The notes: generated by a model not told the origin, from the sequence alone. A DNA stretch of 47,658 nucleotides from Prasinococcaceae sp. CCMP 1430 (GCA_013416795.1 RQSC01000154.1:1-47658); one strand, 5' to 3'; positions 13-37,091 are shown, counted from the first letter of the stretch. Numbers and translations: made by a program.

Positions 13-2207
13 GTGCGTTGTTTTTTTCCCGTAATTTTGGCGTTGAGGGGAGCGAGTGCCGTCCGCAGGGCGAGCGGCCGCGCCGGCGTGGGAGGCAGGG
101 CTGGGGGCGCACACGCCCGCGCGCAGCCTCTGTGGACGAGCGATACCCGGGCTGGTGAGTCAGCTCTTGTTCCAAACGAGGAGTGGCACAGCGCGCTCGC
201 GCGCCTTCGGCGGGACGGCGTCGGCGAGGTCGACGCCAGCACGCGTGCGGCGCTCGTGGAGAGCGGCTTCGCTCCGGAGCAGCCATGCTTCATCGTGGGC
301 CCGCGTTGCCACCCACGCTGTCAGCAGCCGGCCCCTCCAACACCCGTGGAGGCACTCTCGCGCGTCTGCCTAGCCGCGCTCCCGGACGACGGCGAGACGC
401 GGCTCTCGGCGTGGCAGCTGGAGGTGCCTGCCAATTTGGATGCAGGATACACTAGTGGCTACAATGGCAGCGTCGGCGCGCGTGACTCGGATGCTGGAGC
501 TACCGGAGGTCCAACTCAGCGTTTCGGCGTGCCCGCGGTCATCGGCATCGGACCTGCCAAGAGCGCCAGCACTGGGCTCTTCGGAATGCTCTATCGCCAC
601 CCGGCGGTGCCAGAACCTGTGAAACCCCCGAAAGCTGGGGGCGCGGGAGGAATCTTCGAGCCAGGACACTTCACGAGTTTCGACCACATCTTCAGCATGG
701 GACTGCCGCACCTCGCGAGTTACTTCCCCGTCGCTTCGGGCCCTGCCGCATTGGACGAGCGCGAGCGCGTGGCACGGGGCAAAGGCCTGCGCGAGCGCGT
801 CCAGATGGATGCCCTGTCCGCTCGGGCGATCGCTGACCACGTTGGCTCACGCGTGACAAGCGACGCAACGCATCGCCTAGCTGCGATGCATGCGGCAGCG
901 GTTGCAGCCCCCCGACAGACGGTCACTGCTGGCGGCGGCACGGTGGCCACACCCAGCGCGCCAGAACTGACGCGCGGCGCCCCGCTCTTCGCCGAGAAGA
1001 GTCCATGGTACATCAGCCACCCCCTTGCGCCTTACCGATTGCACGCGACGCTGCCGGGCGCCCTGGCGGTGGCGACCCTTCGGGACCCAGTCGAGCGCGC
1101 ATTTTCCGGCTTTGTACACACGAACAAGAATCGCTTCGCGAGGGGGCTGGGGCCACTCATGCCTTTCAATCAAACGGTCGAGATGGCCATTGCGGAGGTC
1201 GAGCGCTATCGCACGTGCCGCGATGCGACGTGGCCGACGGCGGCGGCAAGCGCGGGCGCTCAGGCGGACACGTACCACGCGCTGTTCACGAGTGATGGCG
1301 TCTCGACGCGGACGCTCCAAGAGATCGATGAGCACATTTGGTACGCGTGCGGAGACTACGCTGGCTTCGATTTTACGCACGTGCGCAATCGCTTCTCGGT
1401 GCGTGCGCCGTGCGCCTATGGCGGTGGCCATCGCCCGTCGCGCGCGCTGGCGTGTCCGCTGCTTCGAGCGCGTGATCGCGCCGGGAGTCACTGACCGGTA
1501 CCTGAGCACACGGCTACGCCCCCCGCCTCCCCCTCCACATGCCACTTTTGATGACGCAGGCGCCTGTCGATGAAATCGTGTTCTATTCCCTGTATCACGA
1601 GCATTTGCCGCGCTGGAGACGAGTGCTCGGGAACCGGCTGCGGATCGTCTCGGAGGGCGATCTGAGGAACGACGCAAACGCAACCATGAACTCGCTGGCC
1701 GCGAGCCTGGGCCTTGCGCCTTTCGATTTCAGCAAGGGAGGACTGGGTTCGCCCAACAACAAGACAGAGGACATTCTCCGCCGCGCCGCACGGGTCAACA
1801 ACGTCAACAAGGGTCGTGGGGAAGGCCGGGGCGGGCGCCCTCCCGGGCGGCGAGGCGTATGGGGCGGTGGCGCACTGGCTGCTGATGGAGGGCGTCACGC
1901 AGGCCACCGCGCGGGCTCACGCCGGGCGAGCGCCGGCGGTGGGCGAAGGCGCGGCAATGACGTCAGCGACGCCGCGCGACGGAGGCTTCTGCAGCAAGCT
2001 CTCCCTCCCCGAAACCATCATCACGTGGGCGAGCGCGCAACGGCGCTCGGTACAGCAGGCGTGTTGCGCACCAGCCGCCCCTTCACCGACCTGGACACCC
2101 TGCGCGATTCGGCTGCAATGGCACGGCTGCGCGCGTACGTCAGGGTCGTTCCCGCAGGCGTCAGCACTGACCCCGCGCTGCCAGAGAATGCATGGTTGAG
2201 GGACTGA
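13..2207 (+). CDS. PAPS-dependent sulfotransferase (heparan-sulfate O-sulfotransferase-like fold); 5' end uncertain or outside the window; intron 1399-1559
   Basis: 5'-PSB-like motif VIGIGPAKSASTGL and 3'-PB motif LRDPVERAFSG in ORF 13..1494. A GT at 1399 and CAG ending at 1559 (phase 0) join it to ORF 1539..2207, which carries SLYHEHLPRW..LRIVSEGDLRND..LGLAPFDF, typical of the sulfotransferase C-terminal half. Confidence 0.8.
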
Positions 2208-2294: not shown

Positions 2295-2731
2295 CATTAT
2301 CTTGGAGGGGGTCTCGTGTTGCCTTTAAAGTCACATCTTACGGTGAAGGGGTTGAAACCCTTTAAAACCTGAAAACTAAGCTTTGACCCAGGCCTACGCA
2401 AAATAGACCGGGTTGGGTGGGTGAGCTCGTGTGCAGACCCTCCTCTGACCCGATAACCCATATTAACCGAGGCTGAATATGCCATTATCTTGGAGGGGGT
2501 CTCGTGTTCACGCCGCGGGGGTTGCTGCGCGCGACAGCGCGCAAAGCAACAAGAGTGGCACACGCCGCGCGCGCGCCTCCTGCGCCAGATATTTTGATTT
2601 TTGGCCGCCCAGGCGCGTTCAGGGAACGCGCTCGGGGAACGACCGGCCAACACTGCAGTTCCACACGCGCTCGTGTGCAGACCCTCCTCTGACCCGATAA
2701 CCCATATTAACCGAGGCTGAATATGCCATTA
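2295..2731. mobile_element. Putative miniature split-direct-repeat element, A1-x-B1-A2-y-B2
   Basis: Exact 26-bp repeat at 2295-2320 and 2483-2508. Exact 63-bp repeat at 2425-2487 and 2669-2731. B1 and A2 overlap by CATTA, and CATTA is also found at both outer ends. The repeats are directly visible; mobile-element status is inference. Confidence 0.55.
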
Positions 2732-3357
2732 AAAAAAGAGGTCGTTGAACTCTTCCACGCTTCTTGACGAGCATCGAACCCAAAAAAATCTGTGAGCCGG
2801 TCCGCGAAGAATTGCAGGCTTTTTGACGTGCGTCGAACAGCGCGTCGGCCGGTCGGGCGAAGGCATTTACGCCCGTTCCACAGCCGTGCGGAATATCTAT
2901 GGCGAATGCATCCATTACATTGACCGCGTTTTTAAGTTTGTATGGTCTTTGAGACTGAAGAATCGCGGCGATGCGAGAATTGCGCTTGCCATTCCGTAGA
3001 GTACGCGGTGCGCGTGCGCGAACGCCGCCGAATTCAAACGTCGGATCGCGCGCGCCCGCAAGCGGACGCGCACAAGGCTTCTTTGAACTCCGCTGAGTTC
3101 GCAAAAGGGCTCGGTTCCGCATTTGGAAGAATCGCGGAAGGAGGTTTTGGCGCGCCGCGGCGGGACGCGGCGCGAGCGCGAGGGAGAGTCGTGTGCGTGG
3201 CGACGTGGAGGCAATGTCAGGCTAAGCGGCGGCGGCGGCGCCGCGGCGCGTGCGGCCGCGCGCTGCAGACGCGGCCAAGGTCGGAGGGGGTGCTGGGGGG
3301 CAGCATGACTCGACGGCGCAGCGTCCGGCGCCACCGGCGGGCTCCCGCGCGCTGAGT

Positions 3358-4734
3358 ATGCGGCAGAAGCACCCGCTGCGCATGTCAAAGCCATTTCGCC
3401 GCCCGCAGGGGGCGCGCGCAGCTCCGCGCACGGACGGCGCCGGGAGCGCTGCCAACGGCGTGTTTGCTGCTGCGGCGCAGGCCATCTCAACCTCCGACGT
3501 GCCGCTTCCGCCGACCGTCAAGCCCGCAGACGCGGAGGAGGATTCTGCGCCCGTGGCCGCGTCTGCGGATGCGCCAGACGAGCCCGTACCCCGCACCGAG
3601 CGCACCGCCGCGTCCGCGCGGTCCGCGGAGCCGGTGCCGCAGCCTCAACGGCGTGCGGGCTCGGCGCGGCGTGCGGGGGCGGCAGGCAAGTCGAAGCCGA
3701 GGCGCACCAACACCGTCACGAACATGCTGGCCACGGCCCCGCGGCGCCATCCAAAGGCTGTGTTCATTGGCTCGCGTCCAGATGGGGTGACGGTGGGGTC
3801 GATGCTCAAGGCCGACGGGCACGAGGTGGGAGTCGCAGGCGTGCCAGCTGATGTGACGGAATTGGCGAAGGGCGTGCGCACCAGCCCCCCTGAGTCGCTG
3901 GTATGCCTGGCGGCCCTCGGAGGCGACGAGGAGAAGATTCAGGCGAAGGTTGGCGCGCTCCGCTCGCTCGCGACCGCGGCAGCGGCGGCGAAGACGCTGT
4001 CGGTTGCCGTGGTGGCGCTCCCTTCGGCTGAGGAAGTCGGGGCGCACCGATGCGATGTGGCCGAGGCCGCCGCCGAGGCCCTTCTCGAGGGAGAGGGAGC
4101 GGTGGATGCGCTCATCGTGCTCGATGAGGTCGCCTGCTTCGACACGCCCTTCGTGCTTGCCGAGCATGCCGGTGGGCTGATGCAGCTCCTGCGCGGCTCG
4201 AGTCGCGCGGACGCGCGCAGGGCCCTCCGCGGACGGGCTGTCCTGGGCGTGGGCAAAGGGCCAGCCGCAGAGGCTGCTCGAAAGGCGCTCGCCGCCTGCG
4301 CAGTCCCGGAGACGGCCATGCCTCGCTCGGTGGTCTACTCCATGCACGGGTGCGTGTCGATTGCCGCGGCCGACGAGGTGGGGGCAGTAGTGCGGACGCT
4401 CGCGCACCCGAACGCAGTCCTCGCGTTCGACTCGACGCTCGCTCCAAAGGGCGGAGAGAAGGGCATGGTGGTGATTGCCCTGGCGTCACGCTTCCACGGC
4501 ATCGGCAATGGCTTCCTTGCCGACTCGGCGCGCGCGGCCGCACTTGCCGAGCTGGCCATGGCCACCCCCGGCATAGACAGGCCCATGCCCAAGCTGCAAT
4601 ACGAGGAGACCGCTGTGCACAGCTTCCTTTCGCAGCGCGCGAAGGAGCGCGCGAGCGACTCTGCGGGCTACCTGCGGAGGCACAGCGAGGCGAAGGGCCG
4701 TGCGGCGTCGTCGCTGCTTGACGACATGCACTGA
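3358..4734 (+). CDS. Highly divergent FtsZ-fold protein (ARC3-like FtsZ domain) with degenerate GTPase motifs and a long low-complexity N-terminus
   Basis: Colinear similarity to FtsZ: KAVFIG, LVCLAALGG, LSVAVVALPSAEEVGAHRCDVAE, VDALIVL, ADARRAL..GRAVLGVG, AAEAARKAL, VGAVVRTLAHPNAVLAF, VVIALASRF. First in-frame ATG is at 3358. Confidence 0.75.
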   Translation: MRQKHPLRMSKPFRRPQGARAAPRTDGAGSAANGVFAAAAQAISTSDVPLPPTVKPADAEEDSAPVAASADAPDEPVPRTERTAASARSAEPVPQPQRRAGSARRAGAAGKSKPRRTNTVTNMLATAPRRHPKAVFIGSRPDGVTVGSMLKADGHEVGVAGVPADVTELAKGVRTSPPESLVCLAALGGDEEKIQAKVGALRSLATAAAAAKTLSVAVVALPSAEEVGAHRCDVAEAAAEALLEGEGAVDALIVLDEVACFDTPFVLAEHAGGLMQLLRGSSRADARRALRGRAVLGVGKGPAAEAARKALAACAVPETAMPRSVVYSMHGCVSIAAADEVGAVVRTLAHPNAVLAFDSTLAPKGGEKGMVVIALASRFHGIGNGFLADSARAAALAELAMATPGIDRPMPKLQYEETAVHSFLSQRAKERASDSAGYLRRHSEAKGRAASSLLDDMH

Positions 4735-4900
4735 ATGCCGCGGCCGGCCACGCGATGGAGGGGTTGAGCTGCCGGGGTGGTATGAAATCGAGAGCGCGCC
4801 CATCGAAGCCACTCGGTTGTATAAACCCGGCGCGAGTAGCGAGAGCCTTCGACGAGGAGAGTGGGCGCGGCGGGCCGACGACGTTGTGAAGATTGAATAT

Positions 4901-6058
4901 TTACAGGGTGTACATGAACGCGCTGCCGCCGCGCGCGCCAGGCAACGGGGCTCTGTCGTTTGCAGGTCCCGCCCCCGCCTGAATTCCAGGGTGAAGATGC
5001 TGGGGCGGGTGCAGGTGCGGCGGGAGCGTGGCCGGGTGCGTCGGCGGCTGGTACGCTCCGGCGCGCTGCTGTGCCGCGGGGTTTGGCGCGAGCGCCGAGC
5101 GGGACGCCTCCTCGTAGGCCTCCTTTATCGCGGATCGCAGCCAGAACTGCTTGCGGAGCCGGAGGTAGCGGTCGAGCGCGGCGTCGGCCTCGTCGGGCGG
5201 CACGTCGCACAGCGAGTGCTCGAGCGCCTCGCTCTCGTCCTTGGACTCCTTCACTGCCTCCCCCAGACGCGCCATGATGCCCGCGGTGGACATAGCGGCG
5301 AGCGCCTCGGCCTGCTTGGCCATGGCGCCCCTGTACGCTTCCAGCGCCGGCTCCAACTCGGTCGAGCGCACGATGGCCACATGGCCGCGCCCATTCTTTA
5401 TGTCTGGTTCGAGCGCGAGGTTGGCCTCGGCGAGAGCCTTGCACTCATCCTGCGCCTGCTGCACCATCTCTGCCAACTGGCCGGCGTTGCCCTGCTCCGC
5501 CGCGAAGGCGTCGAAAGCAGAGGATGACGTCAGCAGCGTGAGCAGTTCGTCGTTCGACAGCTCTCCGAGCGCCAGGAACCGCTCCGGCACCGCCGGAACT
5601 GTGGTTGACGACTGGCGGCACATGCTCGCCTCGTTGTGGCCAGAAGCCCTCGATCCGTTCGCGCCGCCGAGCGCTCCGGCACCCGCCCCGAGCGTCGCGA
5701 CCACGTCGGATACCACTTTGGCGAGATTGCTCCCCTTCGCCACGTCCCACAGCCGCGTGCGCTTGAAGCCCACCGCGCCGCTCTCGCGGTCCACCCACGG
5801 GTGACTCACCGGTGGCGACACACGCAGCTCCGGTGACACCGCCGGAAACTCGTCCGAGAGGCACACGTGCAGCGTCGCGGCCCCGCGCCCGCGCGGCAGC
5901 TGGAGCGGCAGCTCGAACTCGGCAGCGACGCTGCTTCCGCCTCGGCTTCCGCCGCCGCCTCCGCCACCGCCGCGGCCGTCCACCTCCACCACGGCGGGAG
6001 AAGCTTTCTGCAGCCCCACGACCTGCTCCGCGCGCGCGTCAGACACCGCCGGCGCCAT
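4901..6058 (-). CDS. VPS37: ESCRT-I subunit VPS37 (UEV-like N-terminal domain + Mod(r) domain)
   Basis: FPAVSPELRVSPPVSHPWVD (UEV-like), then LSNDELLTLL, LAEANLALEP, AIVRSTEL, ESEALEHSL and YLRLRKQFWLR, matching plant VPS37. ATG at 6058; stop overlaps TGTAA. Confidence 0.85.
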   Translation of the reverse strand: MAPAVSDARAEQVVGLQKASPAVVEVDGRGGGGGGGGSRGGSSVAAEFELPLQLPRGRGAATLHVCLSDEFPAVSPELRVSPPVSHPWVDRESGAVGFKRTRLWDVAKGSNLAKVVSDVVATLGAGAGALGGANGSRASGHNEASMCRQSSTTVPAVPERFLALGELSNDELLTLLTSSSAFDAFAAEQGNAGQLAEMVQQAQDECKALAEANLALEPDIKNGRGHVAIVRSTELEPALEAYRGAMAKQAEALAAMSTAGIMARLGEAVKESKDESEALEHSLCDVPPDEADAALDRYLRLRKQFWLRSAIKEAYEEASRSALAPNPAAQQRAGAYQPPTHPATLPPHLHPPQHLHPGIQAGAGPANDRAPLPGARGGSAFMYTL

Positions 6059-6158
6059 CGCGCCCGGCACTGTCCGCCCGCCCGCCCTCCAGCCAGCGCC
6101 CCCGCCTCCGAGGCCGCCCAACACCCCGCGCCCGCGGCGCCAGCGCTTGCGCCCAGCA

Positions 6159-6385
6159 CCGCTCGCACGCGCGCGCGCGCGCGATCGCATGCGTTTTCAC
6201 CTACGCTTCACATATGTACGTCAAAACGCAGGGAAATCGCGACGCCGCTCGCACGCGCGCGCGCGCGCGATCGCATGCGTTTTCACCTACGCTTCACATA
6301 TGTACGTCAAAACGCAGGGAAATCGCGACGCCGCTCGCACGCGCGCGCGCGCGCGATCGCATGCGTTTTCACCTACGCTTCACAT
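6159..6385. repeat. 86-bp tandem repeat, about 2.6 identical copies
   Basis: Unit starts at 6159, 6245 and 6331 (CCGCTCGCACGCGCG...TGCGTTTTCACCTACGCTTCACATATGTACGTCAAAACGCAGGGAAATCGCGACG). Confidence 0.95.
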
Positions 6386-6553
6386 GCAGTAGCTAGGTCA
6401 AAACTAAAGCACGCGTTTCTCCATCTCCGTCACATGTGAGAAGAGCGTACAGTACGTGACATGTGTGTGAGCGTGTGTGCGCGCGCGAGCGCGCACGGGG
6501 GTGGTGGCGGCACAGCGCGCGCGCGCCCCCCCTTGCGCGCGCCGCCGGCCGCG

Positions 6554-7231
6554 ATGCCGACCTTCGTGCTGTGGGTGAAGGCCGAGCTCGAGAACGTGGC
6601 GGAGATCGCAGCGCCGGCGGGCCACGCGTGGTGCATCGACGTGCAGCAGGCCGCAGGCACCGAGGAGAAGAAGGGGGTGTGGGTCGACCCCGCCGAGGAG
6701 GCCGAGCTGAGCGGCTCGCGCGGCGTCGCCAACCTCGTCATCAAGTTCGACAACAAGGAGGCCTCGGCCAGCCTGGTGGATATCAAGGTGTGTGTGAGAG
6801 AGTGAGTGCGTGCGTGCGTGTGCATGCGTGCGTTTGCGTGCGCGCGCGCGCGCGTGCGTGTGCGCGTGCGTACGCATTTGCATAGGTGTGTGTGCGTGTG
6901 TGTGCGCGCGCGTGTGTGCGCATGTGTGCGCTGACCGCCGCCTGTCCTTCCGCAGGGGCTGGTCCCGGCGACGTACACCGCCGAGGGTCAGGAGAAGGAC
7001 AAGTGGCAGCCGCTGATTGCGCTCGAGTGCCGCGGCCTCGAGCCCATCGCCTGGCAGCCGCGCGGGGGTTACAGTGTGACGAGCGCCGGCGGCAGCGGCA
7101 AGGTGTTCGAGGACGTTGAGTTCGAGGACGGCGAGTGGTGTGAGTATGACGACGAGGACGACCTCAGCGTGGAGATCGGTGAGCTGGAGCACGAGTGGCG
7201 CGTGCACAAGGAGAAGAAGGGCAAGAAGTGA
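6554..7231 (+). CDS. CZIB: DUF866/UPF0587 (CZIB/C1orf123-like) protein; exons 6554-6787 and 6956-7231
   Basis: LWVKAELENV, SGSRGVANLVIK, LECRGLEP and GEWCEYDD motifs. GT at 6788, CTGAC branch at 6931, CAG ending at 6955; phase 0 splice restores the frame. Confidence 0.9.
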
Positions 7232-7416
7232 CGCGAGCGCGCACGTGCACGCGTGAGCGAGCGAGCGAGCGAGCGCACGTAAGCACCGGCCGGACCGCCG
7301 CACGCCGTCGCCGCATGTGTCCACCACTGCCGCCACGCGCACGCGCGCGCACGTAGATTCACACAAGCACGCACGCGCGCACATCCTCACCCTCACACGC
7401 GCGCGCACACACACAT

Positions 7417-7417
7417 A

Positions 7418-7464
<47 letters not shown>
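7417..7464. repeat. (ACGC)12 microsatellite
   Basis: Directly visible, downstream of the DUF866 gene. Confidence 0.9.
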
Positions 7465-7979
7465 GCACACATCGGATAGCCGTCGAAGCCGAAACCGCCC
7501 GCTCCCATTCATGAGAAATTCATTTACCAGTCAAGACAACCCACGGGCGATCCTAAGGAGAAGCTTCGTTTGCATTGGCGTGTTTGATCTTTTCCAAAGC
7601 TTTTGGGTGCTGGGCGCAGAGGTGTGCCACTGTGCGCGCGGAGCGGCGGCGCGCTGAGGGCAGCGTTGGGGGCGTTCGAGTGGTGGGCGGCGATACGGCG
7701 CTCACCCGCGCGCTCGGCCCGGCAGCCGCCGGCCGCCGCGAGGGCTTTCGGAGGGCCCCGGCGGCCCCGCGGCCGCCCCCATCAAAACGCACGCCAAAAG
7801 CCAAACCCAAATGCGCTCGGTCATTTCGAAGGGCGACGCCCGCGCGTCACTTCCAAGGGCACTTCCAAGGGCGAATTTCACGACGAGCCCCCGAAAATTG
7901 CCGCGCGCGTCGACGTTTCAATGCACGATGCAATGAGAATATGCAGAATGCATTCGGGAGGGGGTTGCAAAGGCGGTTT

Positions 7980-24599: not shown

Positions 24600-27500
24600 A
24601 TGCCTCGCTGCAGCGATGGGGGCGCGGTCGTGATTGACGTGTCGGCCACCAAGTGGTTGGGCGAGCCCGCCATCGACACCGCCGTTACGGCCGAGCTCTT
24701 CCGCCGCCGTTCGGCGCCGTGCGCGGAGGCGGCGAACGGCGCGCCGCAGCGGAGCAGCTTCCCGGGGCGCGGGCGCGCACCGCGCGCGTCCGATGGGGTC
24801 GGCTTCGCCGGTGCCAAGGCGAGGATATCGCTCACGGGCGACGGCGACGGCCTCATCGCGCAGCGCCGCGCGAGCGTGCACCACCAGCACGCTCCCAAGG
24901 CGAGGGGTACGCACGCGCGCGCGCGCGCGCACGAACAGGCATGCCCCTCCGTCCCCCGCGCGCGCGCCGGGGAACGGGCCCATATCAAAACGCACTACGC
25001 GCGCGCTCCCGAAACCGCACCCGAGACCGCCCGCGCCGAACCGGGGCGAAGCCGCCACTCAGAGGCGGGCCGCGGCGAGGCGCGCGCGGGGGGACGCCGG
25101 AACGGGCCGGGGCGGGCAATGTCGTTACGCTCGCTCCCCTCCCCCTCCGCGCGCGCACGGCGCGGGCGCGTGCGGCGAGCGGTCGTGGCAGGCGCGCATG
25201 CAAGGGGCGGAGCGCGCGAGAGAGAGAGGCGACCGAGCGAGCGAGCGCTCGGGGGGCGGGCTAACTCGAGTGGGTGCGCCGGTCCAGCGCCGGCGCGAGA
25301 GGAGCGCCGCGCATCTCTGACTCAACAGCGCCCGCCTGCGTTCGTGCTCATCCCCTCACTCGCGCCCGCGCTCGGCCGCGCTCCGCTGCATCCACACGAT
25401 AGAGAATGGCAAGTCAAACGTGTTCGATGAGATGGAGACCAAGAGCACCAATTTCCCCGAGTGGAAGTTAAAGATCGCCGATCAGGTTGAGAATGGCGCG
25501 CCCGCGGCTATCATGATGCTCATCACGCTGTGGGCGCTCTTTGCGGACGACATCCGTCTTGCGGGCACCGACAAAGGGGCAGACGATGCTTTCGTGGGCA
25601 TGACCATATTCTGCCTGCTCGCCTTTACGCTCGAGCTGCTCGCTCTGAGCTTCTGCAAGAAGGACTACTTCCTGGGCTTCTACTTCCTGCTTGATTTCGT
25701 GGCGACAGGGAGTCTACTGTTTGACATTCCTGAGGTAAACGAGGGGCTGTACGGCTCGAGCGATGGCAGTGACGGGGCGCAGTCGACCACACTGGCTCGC
25801 GCGTCGCGCACGTCACGCGCTGGCACCAAGGCTGGGCGCATCGTGCGCCTCGTGCGCCTCGTGCGCATTGTCAAGCTGTACAAGCAGTGGACGATGAAGA
25901 AGGAGGAGCGCGAGCGCATGAAGAACGCCGACCTGATGGACGACGAGCTGCTCGATCTGCAGGAATCGCGCGTGGGAAAGAAGCTCTCCGAGCTCACCAC
26001 CCGCCGTGTGATCGTCGGTGTGCTTGCCATGCTATTCATCTTGCCGACTTTCGAGGTCGACTTCCACGACGACCGCAAGCTCGAGGAGTGGCATCTGCCA
26101 GCCACTAGGGCGCTCACGGAGACTTGGCTGTCGCCCTGCCACCTCGACGGTGAGCCCTATAGCTATGATGAGCTCGTAGACCTCAACGCGCGCGCCGCCC
26201 TCAATCCGAGCCTGCTGCTTGGCGGAGCGAACGCTGAGGTCAAGATCTGCAACCACTGCGCTGGTGTGATCGGCGAGGAGTGGAATGCGGTGCATGGTGC
26301 GTCGCGTCACGCTTTGCCTTGGCGGCGCGCCAGCTGTATTCGTACTTGCAGCTGCTGCCAGTGCCCGTGACTACCCTCGCACGTTTCTCCACGCTCGCCG
26401 TTCATTCTATTCTGACGGGCTGGCCTCGCACGCACGTGCGCGCCGGTCGCCTGTGCAGCCGCGCGGGCCCTCGAATGGCGCCACTGCACGACTCTATCCT
26501 TTCAGAAGGCGCTGGACGTATTCTGCGACAACACAGACGGCGTGGCAGGAGGCGGCGGCGAGCTTGGGTGGTTTGATTCGATCGATCGCGACCCCTCGTC
26601 TAGGCCTGGCATCCCGTGCAAGGATAAGTCGATCGCCAAACTTGTGATCGCTGTGCAAGCGGACAGCTCTGCACAGGGCACCAACCATGGTGATCACGGC
26701 ATGGGCGATCAGAGCGCCAACTCCGGCGCGGTCATCGTCAATGATGTCGAGCGCCTCGATGGGCTACGCGACGAAGAGGTCAAAGTCGCCGGATACACGA
26801 CGGTCGTATGGTGGTCGCCGGACGCGACGTACGTGTCGAGCGTCTCGCTTGACATCAAGGGCACATCACGGTTCAGCGCCATACTCAACATCCTGCGCAC
26901 CATTTTCATCACCATCGTGCTTGGCGCGGGCGCTATGCTCTTCTCGAAGGACGCAAACGAGCTTGTACTCACGCCTATCGAGCGCATCATCAAGCGCGTG
27001 CGTGACATCGCCGAGAACCCGCTCGCAGCAGTTGACCCCAGGACCAAGGGCGCAGACGATGATGATGGCAACGACGAACAGTTCGAGATGGTCATCCTTG
27101 AACACTCGATTAATAAGATCTGCTCGCTGCTTGCCATCGGCTTCGGCGAGGCTGGCGCGGAAATCATCGGCGAGAACATGCGCTCGGGCGGTGACCTCAA
27201 TCCCATGGTGCCTGGTCGCAAGATGGTGGCCATTTTCGGGTTCTGCGACATCCGCCAATTCACCGACGCCACGGAGGTGCTGCAGGGGGATGTCATGGAG
27301 TACGTGAACTCCATTGGCAACATCGTGCACAACGAAGTGTCGCTGCACGGGGGCTCCGCCAACAAGAACATCGGCGATGCCTTCCTGCTCGTCTGGAAGT
27401 TCCCCGAGCATGTGACCCTCGATATGGTGGAGGATGTTGTTTTCCACGGCGCGGACTGCCCGCACGAAATTTCTGAGGTTGCCGACAAGGCGCTCGCGTC

Positions 27501-28194
27501 GTTTGTGGTCATCGTGGCCGCGCTCCGCCGGTCGGCACGCCTCGCGGAGTATCGCAAGAACAAGGTGCTCAATGAGCGCATCCCCAACTTCGAGGTGAAG
27601 ATGGGCTTCGGCCTGCACGTCGGCTGGGCTATTGAGGGCGCCATTGGTAGCGCGCACAAGATCGACGCGAGCTACCTCAGCCCCAACGTCAACATGGCCG
27701 CGCGTCTGGAGGCAGCCACTAAGCAGTTCCGAACGCCCATGCTGCTGTCGCAGGACTTCGTATCCATCCTGAGCCCCAAGGCGGCGCCACACGTGCGCCA
27801 GATCGATGCTGTGACTGTCAAGGGCTCGAAGCGGCCCATTGGGCTATACACCTTCGATGTGCACACTGACGATATCACGCCCGAGCCGGAAGGGCGCTCG
27901 GCGAGCGAGGATCTTGCAGAGATGACCGACGAGTTCCTCGAGCACCCGGACATCCTCAGCGTGCAGGCCAAGGACGTCGAGTTCAACCAAGCGTTCGAGA
28001 TTGGCTTCCAAGCATATCAGCGCGGCGACTGGATCACCGCACGCACGCAGCTCGAGCGCACGCTGGAGATCGCCAAGCGCCCGGGATGCAAGTCCAACCC
28101 CGGCCCAAGCATTTCACTGCTTGAGGTCCTCCACGAGCACAATTTCCAGGCGCCGCCCGACTGGAAAGGCTTCCGCGAGCTCACGGAGAAGTGA
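24600..28194 (+). CDS. Class III adenylyl cyclase with N-terminal voltage-sensor-like TM domain and C-terminal TPR-like helices; exons about 24600-24906, 25403-26289, 26506-28194
   Basis: S4-like RIVRLVRLVRIVKLYK. Cyclase motifs FCDIRQFT, ANKNIGDAF, KIDASY and NMAARLE, with the Lys/Asp pair that specifies ATP. Splices: GTACGC at 24907 to TAG ending at 25402 (phase 1) and GT at 26290 to CAG ending at 26505 (phase 0). The first exon is less certain. Confidence 0.9.
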
Positions 28195-34886: not shown

Positions 34887-36295
34887 TCACCGGCCTATGG
34901 GCCGCAGCCGCATGGGCGCATCTGGCTCGCGCGCCGCGTCCACGGAGGCGTAGCCGTCGATGAGCTCCCGCGCCGACTCGAGCGCCTCGTCGAAAGTGGA
35001 TGCATCCGTGTATTTCGTGTACTCATGCACGAACGCCTTGCGGCTGTACAACTTTTTGAAGCGCGAGGTCATCTCGCCGACAGTGTGGCGGATAGCGCAG
35101 CTGTTGGTGAGCGCGAGCACAGAGTGCGAGTTGTGCTCCGGCGGCGCGGAGCACAGCCCCCACTTGACGCCCTCGAGGTTCCAGTGAGCGAAGCGCAACC
35201 CTTTCTTGAACCTCGCTGCGCCGCGCTGCACGTCGTCCACGCTCAGATTGCCGCGCGCGAGCAGCGCGCAACACAGCGCCGCGGAGGAGCGCACGTCCGC
35301 GCGCACGAGCTGCGCCTCGCGGCTCGAGACCAGCGCAAATGACGCAGACACCGCCTGCGCGTTGGCGTGCGCCGAGGTGGGCGCAGGCCGCTGCGGGGGT
35401 GCGCGGGGGTCACTCCGTGCTCCCTCCGAGCCGGCGCGCCGCATGGGAGGCACCGGCGCCGCGGATGCGAGCAGCATGTGCCTCCGTGGAAACGGCACCA
35501 GATTGGTGGTGATCTCGCTCAGATCGACGTTGAGCTCGCCGCCGAAGCGGGTGCTCGCTGTCAGGCCGAGCAGCACGTCTGCCGCGAGCGCGTTCATCGA
35601 GTCGAACGGCGCGGCACGCGCCTCGGCGGCGGCGTCCGCCGCGCTCGCGCGCGCAGCAGCCGCCCTGGCACCGACAGAGCCAGCCGCCGACCGCTCCGAG
35701 CGCTTGGCGGTGATCTCTGCTCGTCGCACCATGTCGATGAGTGCCTGGTTTTCGAGGGGCACGACCGCGTCAGCGCCGTCGGCCAGAGCCTTGAGTGTCA
35801 GTAGCGCGTTGTACGGCGAGGTGACGACGTCGTCATCCTCCGAGGGAAACACCGAGGCCGCCAGCTTGAAGACCTTCGGGTACGCGTCCGCAAGCAGCTC
35901 GAGCGTAGCGGAGCCAACGCCGCTGCCCGTGCCGCCGCCCATCGAGTGCGTCATGAAGAAGCCCTGAAGCGAGTCGGCGTCCTCCGCGGCCGTGCGCAGC
36001 AGCTCGAGCAAGTCATCGGCGTACTTGTTGCCGTAGAAGTCGTGGCCGCAAGCCCAGTTGTTGCCCGAGCCGCTCACATCGGTGAGCAGCAGCTTGCGGT
36101 CCAGCACGCCGCCGAGCGGCCCGCGGAGCGCCTCCGTCACGGGGCCCTCCTCCATGTCCACCATCACCGCGCGCGCTCGCAGCGTGTCGATCGGGGAGCC
36201 CACGGCGTGCGGGCGGTCGCGCCCGTCCACGTTGCGAAAGAAGGTGGATAGCGCATCATCGTACGTTGCGACGACGCTCTCGCTGCCACCACCAC

Positions 36296-36345
<50 letters not shown>

Positions 36346-36449
36346 GCGCGGTGCAGCGCGGCGTGCTCGCCGAGTGCGAGCTGCCAGAAGCGCGTGCCGA
36401 GCTGGTTGCCGCACTGCCCGACGTGCACCGTAATCACCTCGCGCGGCAT
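34887..36449 (-). CDS. TUBE1: Epsilon-tubulin
   Basis: MPREVITVHVGQCGNQLG, FWQLALGEH, TFFRNVD, RARAVMVDMEEG, SGSGNNWA.GH, HSMGGGTGSG and EDDDVVTSPYN are diagnostic of epsilon-tubulin. Confidence 0.95.
36297..36344 (-). repeat. (CAG)16 coding trinucleotide repeat (polyQ) in epsilon-tubulin
   Basis: 48 bp of pure CTG on the + strand. Confidence 0.95.
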
Positions 36450-37091
36450 GCCACGAGCGCCCGCGCGCAGCGAGGAGCGGCAGACGGCGGGGCAGGTGGG
36501 GGGTCGGTGCTCCCACCGCCCGGAGCCCGCCGCCTGGGCTGCGCACACCGCAGCGCACACCACCCGCGCTGAGTGCCGCCCCCGCCTCGACCGCGCGCGC
36601 GGGCGGCGCGGGCTCGGGGGTTGTGGCGGGCGTCAGCGAGGGCGCGGCGCGCGCGCACGCGCGCGGGCGGCGCGCACGCGCGCGCTCGAAATCGCGCGCG
36701 CGTGCGAGGCGCCCCCGCGCACACCCGGTCTGATCGCGCTATGATCGGGTCTTTTCACGCCTTTGCCCCAGAATACCCAGGTTTATCATCGATCTGACCA
36801 GGGTAGACAGGCGTTTGGACGGCCGTTTTGATTTTGGCGGCGATTTCGCCGCGCGCGCGCTGGCAGGGCCTGGCAGCACCACTACGACGGCGCTGGGCGC
36901 TGTATGCCGGCCGGCCCTCCCGGCGCGTCCCGCCGCCATCGGTCCCACGCAGCTCCCTCGCGCGATCGACGAGAGGCGCCGAGCGCACAAGTCGGGCCGG
37001 GGGGATCCGCCGGCTGCCCGCGCGGGCAGCCTGGTGGGCAAGGGCAGGGAGGTGGTGGAAAGCACGTCGCGCTTCGCACGTGGTCGTCAAT

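What the first reader, a model, noticed from the sequence alone, without database searches (positions are those of the whole stretch)
3358..4734. GTPase-dead FtsZ derivative resembling ARC3 but lacking MORN repeats
Seen: an FtsZ-like domain order across both subdomains, but the tubulin signature GGGTG(T/S)G is replaced by LGGDEEKIQ, the GAG loop region appears deleted, and the T7 NxDFAD is reduced to SSRAD. Known: plant ARC3 is an FtsZ-derived, non-GTP-binding plastid-division regulator with C-terminal MORN repeats; from memory its N-terminus contains an IGSRxD motif like IGSRPD here. Seen: the ORF stops at 4734 and the next gene converges, leaving no room for MORN repeats. Inference: a stand-alone ARC3-like protein, an evolutionary intermediate, or a new FtsZ-ring regulator.
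Basis: partly seen in the sequence, partly recalled or inferred. Interest (0 to 1): 0.7.

Follow-up and report, generated by a model that had tools for sequence, protein, structure and literature searches.

The report
GTPase-dead FtsZ copy in green picoalga
A marine green picoalga carries a conserved nuclear gene for a copy of the chloroplast-division protein FtsZ that has lost its GTP-binding parts but kept FtsZ's docking tail, so it most likely regulates the division ring, much as plant ARC3 does, though kinship with ARC3 could not be tested.

Summary
ORF 3358-4734 (+) encodes a 458-aa protein whose residues 131-380 are a full two-subdomain FtsZ core:
- hhalign gives 99.6% probability, E 2e-24.
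- VIA-align gives Z 23 and rmsd 2.4 A over 238 residues against solved FtsZ structures.

The nucleotide-contact motifs are gone:
- T1 reads GSRPDG.
- About 35 residues carrying T2 and T3 are deleted.
- T4 reads LGGDEEK.
- T7 is cut down to SSR..AD.

There is no MORN repeat in the protein, in the 47.6-kb window, in eight wild strain variants, or in the only other relative (P0002, 43% identical). In both species a convergent VPS37 gene follows directly.

- The family keeps FtsZ's C-terminal docking peptide (VPAFLR in P0002, VHSFLS here).
- P0002 still has an intact T7 loop (NIDFAD).

The FtsZ-like domain is under purifying selection (6 synonymous, 0 nonsynonymous changes against a wild strain). 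Only two lineages carry the gene among 1.84 billion representative proteins.

Best reading: a lineage-restricted FtsZ-derived pseudo-GTPase that caps or poisons FtsZ filaments or competes for their tethers. It works like ARC3 without MORN. Kinship with ARC3 is neither shown nor excluded, because no ARC3 sequence could be obtained. The scan had not noted this gene before.

The parts
3358..4734 (+). Whole ORF, 458 aa plus stop: an FtsZ-derived pseudo-GTPase
   Evidence: Eight near-identical wild variants all end at the same stop.
3358..3747 (+). N-terminal 130 residues: basic, Ala/Pro-rich and not conserved. Presumed organelle presequence plus a disordered spacer.
   Evidence: In the first 50 aa there are 8 R+K against 2 D+E, and the first acidic residue is at position 26. 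All 6 nonsynonymous differences from the wild strain fall here, with no synonymous ones. The region does not align with P0002. Targeting is inferred from composition only.
3748..4197 (+). FtsZ N-terminal (former GTP-binding) subdomain and helix H7, residues 131-280. It has five strands instead of six.
   Evidence: Secondary structure of the model; alignment. Only 32% identical to P0002.
3769..3786 (+). Degenerate T1 loop: GSRPDG in place of GGGGGN
3916..3942 (+). Degenerate T4 tubulin signature: LGGDEEKIQ in place of GGGTGTGAA
4198..4212 (+). T7 remnant SSRAD, a five-residue deletion relative to NxDFAD. Only the final Ala-Asp remains.
   Evidence: P0002 keeps NIDFAD at the same place.
4213..4497 (+). 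FtsZ C-terminal subdomain (H8 to S10), residues 286-380. This is the best conserved part of the core.
   Evidence: hhalign. H9 and the following loop are 83-86% identical to P0002. The best canonical matches to this part are plastid-type FtsZ fragments.
4498..4563 (+). Family-specific conserved extension after S10 (HGIGNGF followed by a helix), residues 381-402
   Evidence: 86-88% identical to P0002. There is no counterpart in canonical FtsZ. Model confidence is low here.
4603..4638 (+). Motif resembling the FtsZ C-terminal peptide (CTP), residues 416-427: EETAVHSFLSQR
   Evidence: MAFFT places it in the columns of the canonical CTPs. The orthologous VPAFLR of P0002 fits the CTP pattern, which arises in 59 of 200,000 shuffled tails. 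The Phe that binds ARC6 in FtsZ2 (PMC11285052) is kept in both species.
4639..4731 (+). Charged C-terminal tail, predicted helical, poorly conserved
   Evidence: 19% identity to P0002
4901..6190 (-). Convergent neighbour, VPS37 (Mod_r). It bounds the gene and rules out adjacent downstream MORN exons.
   Evidence: Pfam Mod_r, E 1e-21. The same neighbour is found in L002 and L001. RNA contigs end at 4883-4904, one with a poly(A) trace.

Best explanation
This is a functional nuclear gene for an FtsZ paralogue that has become a pseudo-GTPase. It keeps the whole FtsZ core fold, but T1 and T4 are replaced, the T2/T3 segment is deleted and T6 has lost its Asn, so it very probably cannot bind GTP.

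Three parts are kept under selection: the C-terminal subdomain, which forms the T7-side longitudinal face of an FtsZ subunit; a new conserved helix after strand S10; and a motif resembling the FtsZ C-terminal docking peptide.

I infer that it is imported into the chloroplast and acts on the Z ring in one or both of two ways:
1. It docks by its T7-side face onto the GTP-bearing end of an FtsZ protofilament. Because it offers no nucleotide face of its own, it ends or destabilises the filament, acting as a capper or poison subunit.
2. It uses its CTP-like motif to occupy the partners that normally hold FtsZ tails, such as an ARC6/Ftn2-type tether, SepF or MinC.

Functionally this resembles ARC3 lacking its MORN domain, which is the fully active form of that inhibitor.

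Shown here: the fold, the motif losses, the absence of MORN, conservation and selection, the narrow distribution, and the retained tail motif. Inferred: plastid location, FtsZ binding, and the capping or competition mechanism.
For: - FtsZ homology and fold.
- Loss of the nucleotide-contact motifs in both species. These segments are also the least conserved, 0-29% identity.
- Purifying selection on the FtsZ-like domain: 6 synonymous and 0 nonsynonymous differences from a wild strain, over 263 synonymous and 718 nonsynonymous sites. My estimate is that this split has a chance of about 4e-4 if changes were neutral.
- Positional orthology across 43% sequence identity, with the same VPS37 neighbour.
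- The relative keeps an intact T7 loop (NIDFAD) and a CTP (VPAFLR; 59 of 200,000 shuffles).
- The best canonical matches to the C-terminal subdomain are plastid-type FtsZ, 57-58 bits against 48 or less for the others.
- Literature: ARC3 without MORN inhibits FtsZ assembly most strongly, and its FtsZ-like domain was proposed to enter filaments and destabilise them (PMC12232670; PMC3494859). The FtsZ2 tail, with its key Phe, binds ARC6 (PMC11285052).
- Unchecked earlier notes say this genome also keeps SepF and a membrane-anchored MinC.
Against: - There is no experimental or localisation evidence. Targeting rests on composition alone.
- In the window's own species both T7 and the CTP are degraded (SSR..AD; VHSFLS). 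Either proposed contact could therefore be weakened here.
- RNA support is thin: two 151-nt metatranscriptome contigs, and no contig in the one presumed RNA set of organism A that I laid, X1.
- The window strain lacks about 100 bp that carry the upstream in-frame ATG present in wild relatives. Its product may therefore start 60 residues later and could be mis-targeted.
- The AlphaFold model was built on an alignment dominated by canonical FtsZ, so it is not fully independent of the sequence evidence.
Confidence: 0.55

Rival explanations
1. It is the ARC3 orthologue of an early-branching green alga. Either it is the ancestral form from before the MORN fusion, or it is an ARC3 that lost MORN.
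For: - It shares the concept of ARC3: an FtsZ-like core without GTPase motifs in a green-lineage nuclear gene.
- A protein language-model search listed a streptophyte ARC3 cluster at score 0.80, against 0.86 for FtsZ clusters. This is a lead only.
- A review states that ARC3 arose early in chlorophyte evolution (PMC10030945).
Against: - None of the best 150 profile hits is ARC3-like.
- The 30 nearest ESM Atlas structures yielded a single row, an FtsZ family.
- MORN is absent in both species.
- The FtsZ C-terminal peptide is retained; from memory, ARC3 lacks it.
- IGSR is not conserved within the family.
- A genome survey places the first ARC6-ARC3 module in liverworts, although chlorophytes were included (PMC12232670).
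- The genome reportedly still has MinC, the factor ARC3 is thought to replace (unchecked).
Confidence: 0.17
2. It is a non-inhibitory structural partner: a nucleotide-free subunit or scaffold. It would co-assemble with or bundle FtsZ1/FtsZ2, or link the Z ring to the plastid peptidoglycan machinery, rather than limit assembly.
For: - The CTP-like motif and the new conserved helix suggest partner binding.
- This alga is reported to keep a bacterial-type septal wall machinery: FtsW, FtsI, SepF and an amidase (unchecked).
Against: In FtsZ, subunit-to-subunit contact along the filament needs the nucleotide face, which is destroyed here. Nothing in the sequence distinguishes activation from inhibition.
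Confidence: 0.15
3. It acts outside the chloroplast, either as a remnant of mitochondrial division or in a cytosolic role.
For: The N-terminus could equally be a mitochondrial presequence. The tree cannot place the pair among FtsZ lineages.
Against: The best canonical matches to the conserved subdomain are plastid-type FtsZ. From memory, green algae are not known to use mitochondrial FtsZ.
Confidence: 0.08
4. It is a decaying FtsZ duplicate without function.
For: - Catalytic motifs are lost and the protein evolves fast: 43% identity, against 68% for the neighbouring VPS37.
- Expression evidence is weak.
- The start region is disturbed in this strain.
Against: - The frame is intact in eight strain variants and in a distant relative.
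- The domain shows 6 synonymous and 0 nonsynonymous changes.
- Family-specific blocks are 83-88% identical across species.
Confidence: 0.05

Closest known systems
[quoted passage not shown]
   Same: Both are nuclear, green-lineage proteins derived from FtsZ that are thought not to be GTPases. ARC3 directly inhibits Z-ring assembly. Its MORN-less form is the fully active inhibitor (PMC12232670, PMC3494859).
   Different: ARC3 has a middle domain and C-terminal MORN repeats that bind PARC6/ARC6 and auto-inhibit it. This protein has neither. Instead it ends with an FtsZ-type C-terminal peptide motif and a charged tail. Sequence kinship to ARC3 could not be tested, and no ARC3 appears among its best 150 relatives.
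Plastid FtsZ2 / cyanobacterial FtsZ
   Same: Same core fold (Z 23). It keeps a C-terminal peptide of the IPDFL type, with the Phe needed for ARC6 binding (P0002 VPAFLR, window VHSFLS). The C-terminal subdomain scores best against plastid-type FtsZ.
   Different: T1, T4 and T6 are lost and the T2/T3 segment is deleted. T7 is lost in the window species. A new conserved helix follows S10. The protein falls below every curated FtsZ model threshold.
Protein cappers and poisons of FtsZ filaments (MciZ, SulA, interface-mutant 'capper' FtsZ)
   Same: The proposed action is the same: occupy one longitudinal face of a terminal subunit and prevent further growth. From established knowledge, a subunit with one good and one dead face acts as a capper.
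   Different: MciZ and SulA are unrelated small proteins, and capper mutants are laboratory constructs. Here the capper would be a natural, conserved FtsZ paralogue. No binding was tested.
FtsZ3 of streptophyte algae, bryophytes and lycophytes
   Same: Both are an additional FtsZ paralogue that regulates Z-ring assembly in part of the green lineage (PMC13650779).
   Different: GTPase-defective ftsZ3 mutants show a phenotype, so FtsZ3 depends on its GTPase. This protein has none.

Membership tests
FtsZ/tubulin superfamily (fold level) | Two-subdomain FtsZ core: a Rossmann-like N-subdomain, helix H7 and a C-terminal subdomain | tested here: met
   hhalign 99.6%, E 2e-24. Foldseek E 1e-15. VIA-align Z 23.4, rmsd 2.4 A, 238 residues. 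One beta-alpha unit of the N-subdomain is missing.
FtsZ proper (functional GTPase) | Tubulin signature GGGTG(T/S)G and the T1, T2, T3 and T6 nucleotide-contact loops | tested here: not met
   T1 is GSRPDG, T4 is LGGDEEK, about 35 residues with T2/T3 are deleted, and the T6 Asn is lost, in both species.
FtsZ proper (functional GTPase) | T7 synergy loop NxDFAD | tested here: not met
   The window protein has SSR-----AD. The orthologue P0002 still has NIDFAD.
FtsZ proper (functional GTPase) | Reaches the curated family thresholds (Pfam Tubulin and FtsZ_C, TIGR00065) | tested here: not met
   The window protein has no Pfam hit. P0002 scores 16 bits on FtsZ_C against a cut-off of 27, and 32 bits on TIGR00065 against 295.
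Plastid FtsZ2-type | C-terminal core peptide (IPDFL type) with the ARC6-binding Phe | tested here: inconclusive
   P0002 has VPAFLR, which arises in 59 of 200,000 shuffles. The window has the degraded form VHSFLS, with Phe and Leu kept. Binding was not tested.
ARC3 | FtsZ-like domain without functional GTPase motifs | tested here: met
ARC3 | C-terminal MORN repeat domain | tested here: not met
   - No Pfam MORN hit in the protein.
- No MORN-like motif in any of the six frames of the window (by regular expression).
- All strain variants and P0002 end before a convergent VPS37 gene.
- No spliced RNA contigs.
ARC3 | Closer in sequence to ARC3 FtsZ-like domains than to canonical FtsZ | not testable with these tools
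   No ARC3 sequence could be retrieved. Indirectly, none of the best 150 profile hits is ARC3-like. Because ARC3 is itself divergent, this does not exclude kinship.
ARC3 | Stromal location, direct FtsZ binding and inhibition of assembly | not testable with these tools
   Needs experiments

The most novel reading that the evidence does not exclude
The protein is the pre-MORN ancestor-type of ARC3, preserved in the earliest-branching green lineage.

On this reading ARC3 began as a duplicate of a CTP-bearing plastid FtsZ that first lost GTP binding. It was regulated through the FtsZ tail, and only later exchanged that tail for a middle domain and MORN repeats. That would date FtsZ-derived Z-ring inhibitors to the base of green plants, co-existing with MinC.
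Probability: 0.15. Interest if true: 0.75.

Novelty: new variant of a known kind. Interest (0 to 1): 0.55.

Why it matters
ARC3 is so far the only described FtsZ-derived, non-GTPase regulator of the chloroplast division ring, and its origin is obscure.

This gene is a second natural case, either independent or ancestral, and it has a different build: a dead core plus the FtsZ docking tail, and no MORN. It sits in an alga that is reported to keep much of the bacterial division set (MinC, MinD, SepF, FtsW, FtsI).

The gene gives a simple natural test of the idea that a nucleotide-free FtsZ subunit controls filaments by capping them. The two orthologues are a ready-made comparison, because one has an intact T7 loop and CTP and the other has both degraded.

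The family is unnamed in every source searched and is limited to two lineages.

Tried and rejected
- **Single-sequence searches.** Pfam, PDB phmmer and NCBIfam found nothing for the window protein. Homology became visible only with the profile that includes P0002.
- **Word-index protein search and exhaustive profile search.** They returned only the protein's own cluster and P0002. All other hits are canonical FtsZ.
- **JGI metagenome scan with the family profile.** There were 483 pattern matches, and none was confirmed.
- **ARC3 sequences.** No tool could deliver one, so the direct comparison and a tree with ARC3 were left out. I did not type ARC3 from memory. My recollection that ARC3 keeps more of the T1-T4 segment and lacks a CTP is marked as memory only.
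- **Maximum-likelihood tree with 51 canonical FtsZ cores (quick search only).** The pair sits on a very long branch (4.7 plus about 3 changes per site) at the midpoint root, so it gives no information on origin.
- **Language-model atlas searches.** Scores were 0.77-0.86, which are leads only. With FtsZ families masked, nothing informative appeared.
- **RNA evidence.** Only contigs were available. There are two short metatranscriptome pieces inside the gene and no joints. This neither proves transcription nor defines the 5' end.
- **Pseudogene reading.** Rejected on the selection and conservation evidence.

Full report
**Where it is.** The window is GC-rich (0.61-0.73), intron-poor eukaryotic nuclear DNA. 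Its genes include VPS37, an RBM39-like RRM protein, a tubulin, an amino-acid transporter and a lipoate/biotin ligase. Near-identical DNA occurs on a Tara Oceans scaffold (L002) and in marine metatranscriptomes. Earlier notes of this scan call the organism a marine green picoalga, and one names Prasinoderma coloniale. The published 69.8% GC of that genome fits (PMC7455551). I did not verify the name myself.

**The ORF.** The frame is open from a TAA at 3223. The first in-frame ATG after it is at 3358, and the stop codon is 4732-4734. A convergent VPS37/Mod_r gene occupies 4901-6190 on the other strand. RNA contigs of that gene end at 4883-4904, one with a poly(A) trace. That leaves about 150 bp between the two genes.

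**Is it FtsZ-like?** Yes.
- Alone, the 458-aa protein matches nothing in Pfam, PDB sequences or NCBIfam.
- The word-index search found one real relative: P0002, 543 aa, 43% identical, on a 2.6-kb ENA contig.
- A profile of the two conserved parts (A2) hits solved FtsZ chains at E 3e-9.
- hhalign against 24 canonical FtsZ gives 99.6% probability and E 2.1e-24 over 205 columns, running from strand S4 to strand S10.
- P0002 alone hits TIGR00065 ftsZ at E 7e-8, far under the family cut-off.
- An AlphaFold2 model of residues 128-458 has mean pLDDT 85 and pTM 0.75.
- The 50 Foldseek matches listed in the PDB are all FtsZ, at about E 1e-15.
- VIA-align gives Z 23.4, rmsd 2.4 A, 238 aligned residues, model 2-253 on FtsZ 11-314.
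- The 30 nearest ESM Atlas structures yielded a single row, an FtsZ family.

The model was built on an FtsZ-rich alignment, so it is not independent of the sequence evidence. The sequence profiles stand on their own.

**State of the functional motifs.**
- T1: GGGGGN has become GSRPDG (residues 138-143). P0002 has GAHGAG.
- About 35 residues covering S2, T2, H2, S3 and T3 are absent in both species. The model accordingly has five strands in the N-subdomain.
- T4: GGGTGTG has become LGGDEEK (187-193). P0002 has LGKGGSD.
- T6: the conserved Asn is lost.
- T7: NxDFAD is SSR-----AD in the window (281-285), but an intact NIDFAD in P0002.

These former nucleotide-contact segments are also the least conserved between the two species, at 0-29% identity. 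GTP binding is therefore very unlikely. That is an inference from motifs, not an assay.

- *The C-terminal peptide.* The tail carries EETAVHSFLSQR (416-427). P0002 has ETAVPAFLRLR at the same place, and MAFFT places both in the columns of the canonical FtsZ C-terminal peptide.
  - The pattern [ILVM]P.[FY][LMI][RKQ] occurs once in P0002, 36 residues from its end.
  - It arises in only 59 of 200,000 shuffles of that tail.
  - It is present in the last 40 residues of 33 of 74 long canonical hits.
  - In plants the core IPDFL of FtsZ2, with its Phe, binds ARC6 (PMC11285052).
- *A new conserved block.* Directly after S10 there is a family-specific block, HGIGNGF followed by a helix (residues 381-402). 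It is 86-88% identical between the species and has no counterpart in canonical FtsZ.
- *The C-terminal subdomain.* It is the best conserved part of the core, with H9 and the following loop at 83-86% identity.

**No MORN.**
- Pfam finds none in the protein.
- A MORN-type pattern occurs in none of the six frames of the 47.6-kb window (a regular expression, so less sensitive than a profile).
- Eight strain variants from metagenomes and SRA assemblies all end at the same residue.
- In the 43%-identical relative the gene is again followed by a convergent VPS37 gene. The two genes are therefore positional orthologues, and the MORN-less build is ancestral to both.
- No RNA contig shows a splice joint.

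**Is it a live gene?** Against the Tara allele (L002), the FtsZ-like domain (residues 131-458) shows 6 synonymous and 0 nonsynonymous differences, over 263 synonymous and 718 nonsynonymous sites. By my estimate the chance of such a split under neutrality is about 4e-4. The N-terminal 130 residues show the opposite, 0 synonymous and 6 nonsynonymous. The protein evolves faster than its neighbour: 43% identity against 68% for VPS37. Even so, its frame and several blocks are kept. Direct RNA support is weak: two identical 151-nt contigs at 3861-4141 in one seawater metatranscriptome, and nothing in X1, the one presumed RNA set of organism A that I laid.

**Distribution and origin.** An exhaustive profile search of 1.84 billion representative proteins returned only two proteins better than E 1e-30, namely P0002 and P0001, the representative of the near-identical (99%) wild-strain cluster. 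The next hits, from E 5e-11, are canonical FtsZ.
- The ten longest hits all carry Tubulin plus FtsZ_C domains.
- No hit has a MORN motif.
- Of the 17 signature-less hits over 330 aa, I read five in full and they are bacterial-type FtsZ variants; most of the others look like N-terminally cut fragments.
- A scan of JGI metagenomes found nothing.
- No source gives the protein a name.
- For the conserved C-terminal subdomain, the best canonical matches are plastid-type FtsZ fragments, at 57-58 bits against 48 or less for the rest. This is a hint of descent from the plastid FtsZ line.
- A tree could not place the pair because its branch is very long.

**Relation to ARC3.** ARC3 is defined by an FtsZ-like domain that is probably not a GTPase, a middle domain, and MORN repeats that bind PARC6/ARC6 and auto-inhibit it (PMC3494859; PMC12232670).
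- The first feature is met here and the MORN feature is not.
- The decisive test, sequence kinship to ARC3's FtsZ-like domain, could not be run. No tool would deliver an ARC3 sequence, and I did not type one from memory.
- Indirect evidence gives no support: no ARC3 among the best 150 hits, a retained FtsZ tail, and no conservation of the recalled IGSR motif.
- Two divergent families can each look closer to canonical FtsZ than to one another, so kinship is not excluded.
- The literature disagrees on when ARC3 arose: early chlorophytes (PMC10030945) or liverworts (PMC12232670).

**How it most likely works (inference).** A subunit that keeps the T7-side face and the C-terminal subdomain, but has no nucleotide face, can dock on the GTP-bearing end of an FtsZ filament and cannot be built upon. 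This is the logic of a filament capper. It matches the published speculation that ARC3's FtsZ-like region enters filaments and destabilises them. It also fits the finding that MORN-less ARC3 is the strongest inhibitor.

The intact T7 loop of P0002 could even trigger hydrolysis in the subunit it caps. The retained tail motif suggests a second route, competition for or co-anchoring by CTP-binding partners. These would be ARC6 or, if the unchecked notes are right, the SepF and membrane-anchored MinC of this genome. In the window's species both T7 and the tail motif are more degraded than in the relative, so the balance between the two routes may differ between the species.

**Caveat on the start.** Wild relatives have an in-frame ATG 180 nt upstream, giving an N-terminus that begins MAAVSARAGG and looks like a typical algal transit peptide. 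The window strain lacks about 100 bp there. It has instead a three-codon upstream ORF ending in the TAA at 3223. If the wild start is the true one, this strain's protein lacks 60 N-terminal residues.

**Verdict.** I file it as a new variant of a known kind: an FtsZ-derived, nucleotide-free Z-ring regulator. It is of moderate to good interest for plastid-division research.

Noticed in passing
window 3189-3226 (compare L002 9570-9700): The window strain lacks about 100 bp that wild relatives have just upstream of the gene, including the in-frame ATG used in three metagenome gene models. In its place is a three-codon upstream ORF (ATG 3214, TAA 3223). The promoter and 5' region, 2727-3188, is only 88.5% identical to L002, against about 99% for the gene itself.
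   Followed up: partly
window 2300-2726: A 427-bp stretch is absent from the otherwise collinear Tara scaffold L002 (BLAST). It lies about 630-1060 bp upstream of the FtsZ-like gene's ATG.
   Followed up: partly
window 4883-4944: RNA contigs of VPS37 (minus strand) end at 4883-4904, one with a poly(A) trace. Two metatranscriptomes carry G instead of A at 4944, a strain difference.
   Followed up: no
window 34887-36563 (-): A 558-aa tubulin-family protein. Its Tubulin GTPase domain is stretched over 238 residues, and about 130 residues separate it from the Tubulin_C match. It may be a delta-, epsilon- or other minor tubulin with inserts.
   Followed up: no
window 26001-28194: The lowest-GC stretch of the window (0.61 against about 0.68-0.72). 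It coincides with an ORF (26542-28194, +) that has a weak adenylate/guanylate cyclase domain.
   Followed up: no
window about 6150-7470: A repeat-rich stretch, apparently of dinucleotide type. It yields long spurious ORFs in several frames that are full of HTHA and RARA runs, between VPS37 and the next genes.
   Followed up: no
P0003, P0004, P0005 (deep-search hits): The best canonical matches are three short gene models that share one plastid-type FtsZ exon flanked by low-complexity junk, apparently from AT-rich eukaryotic contigs. Their organism is unknown.
   Followed up: no
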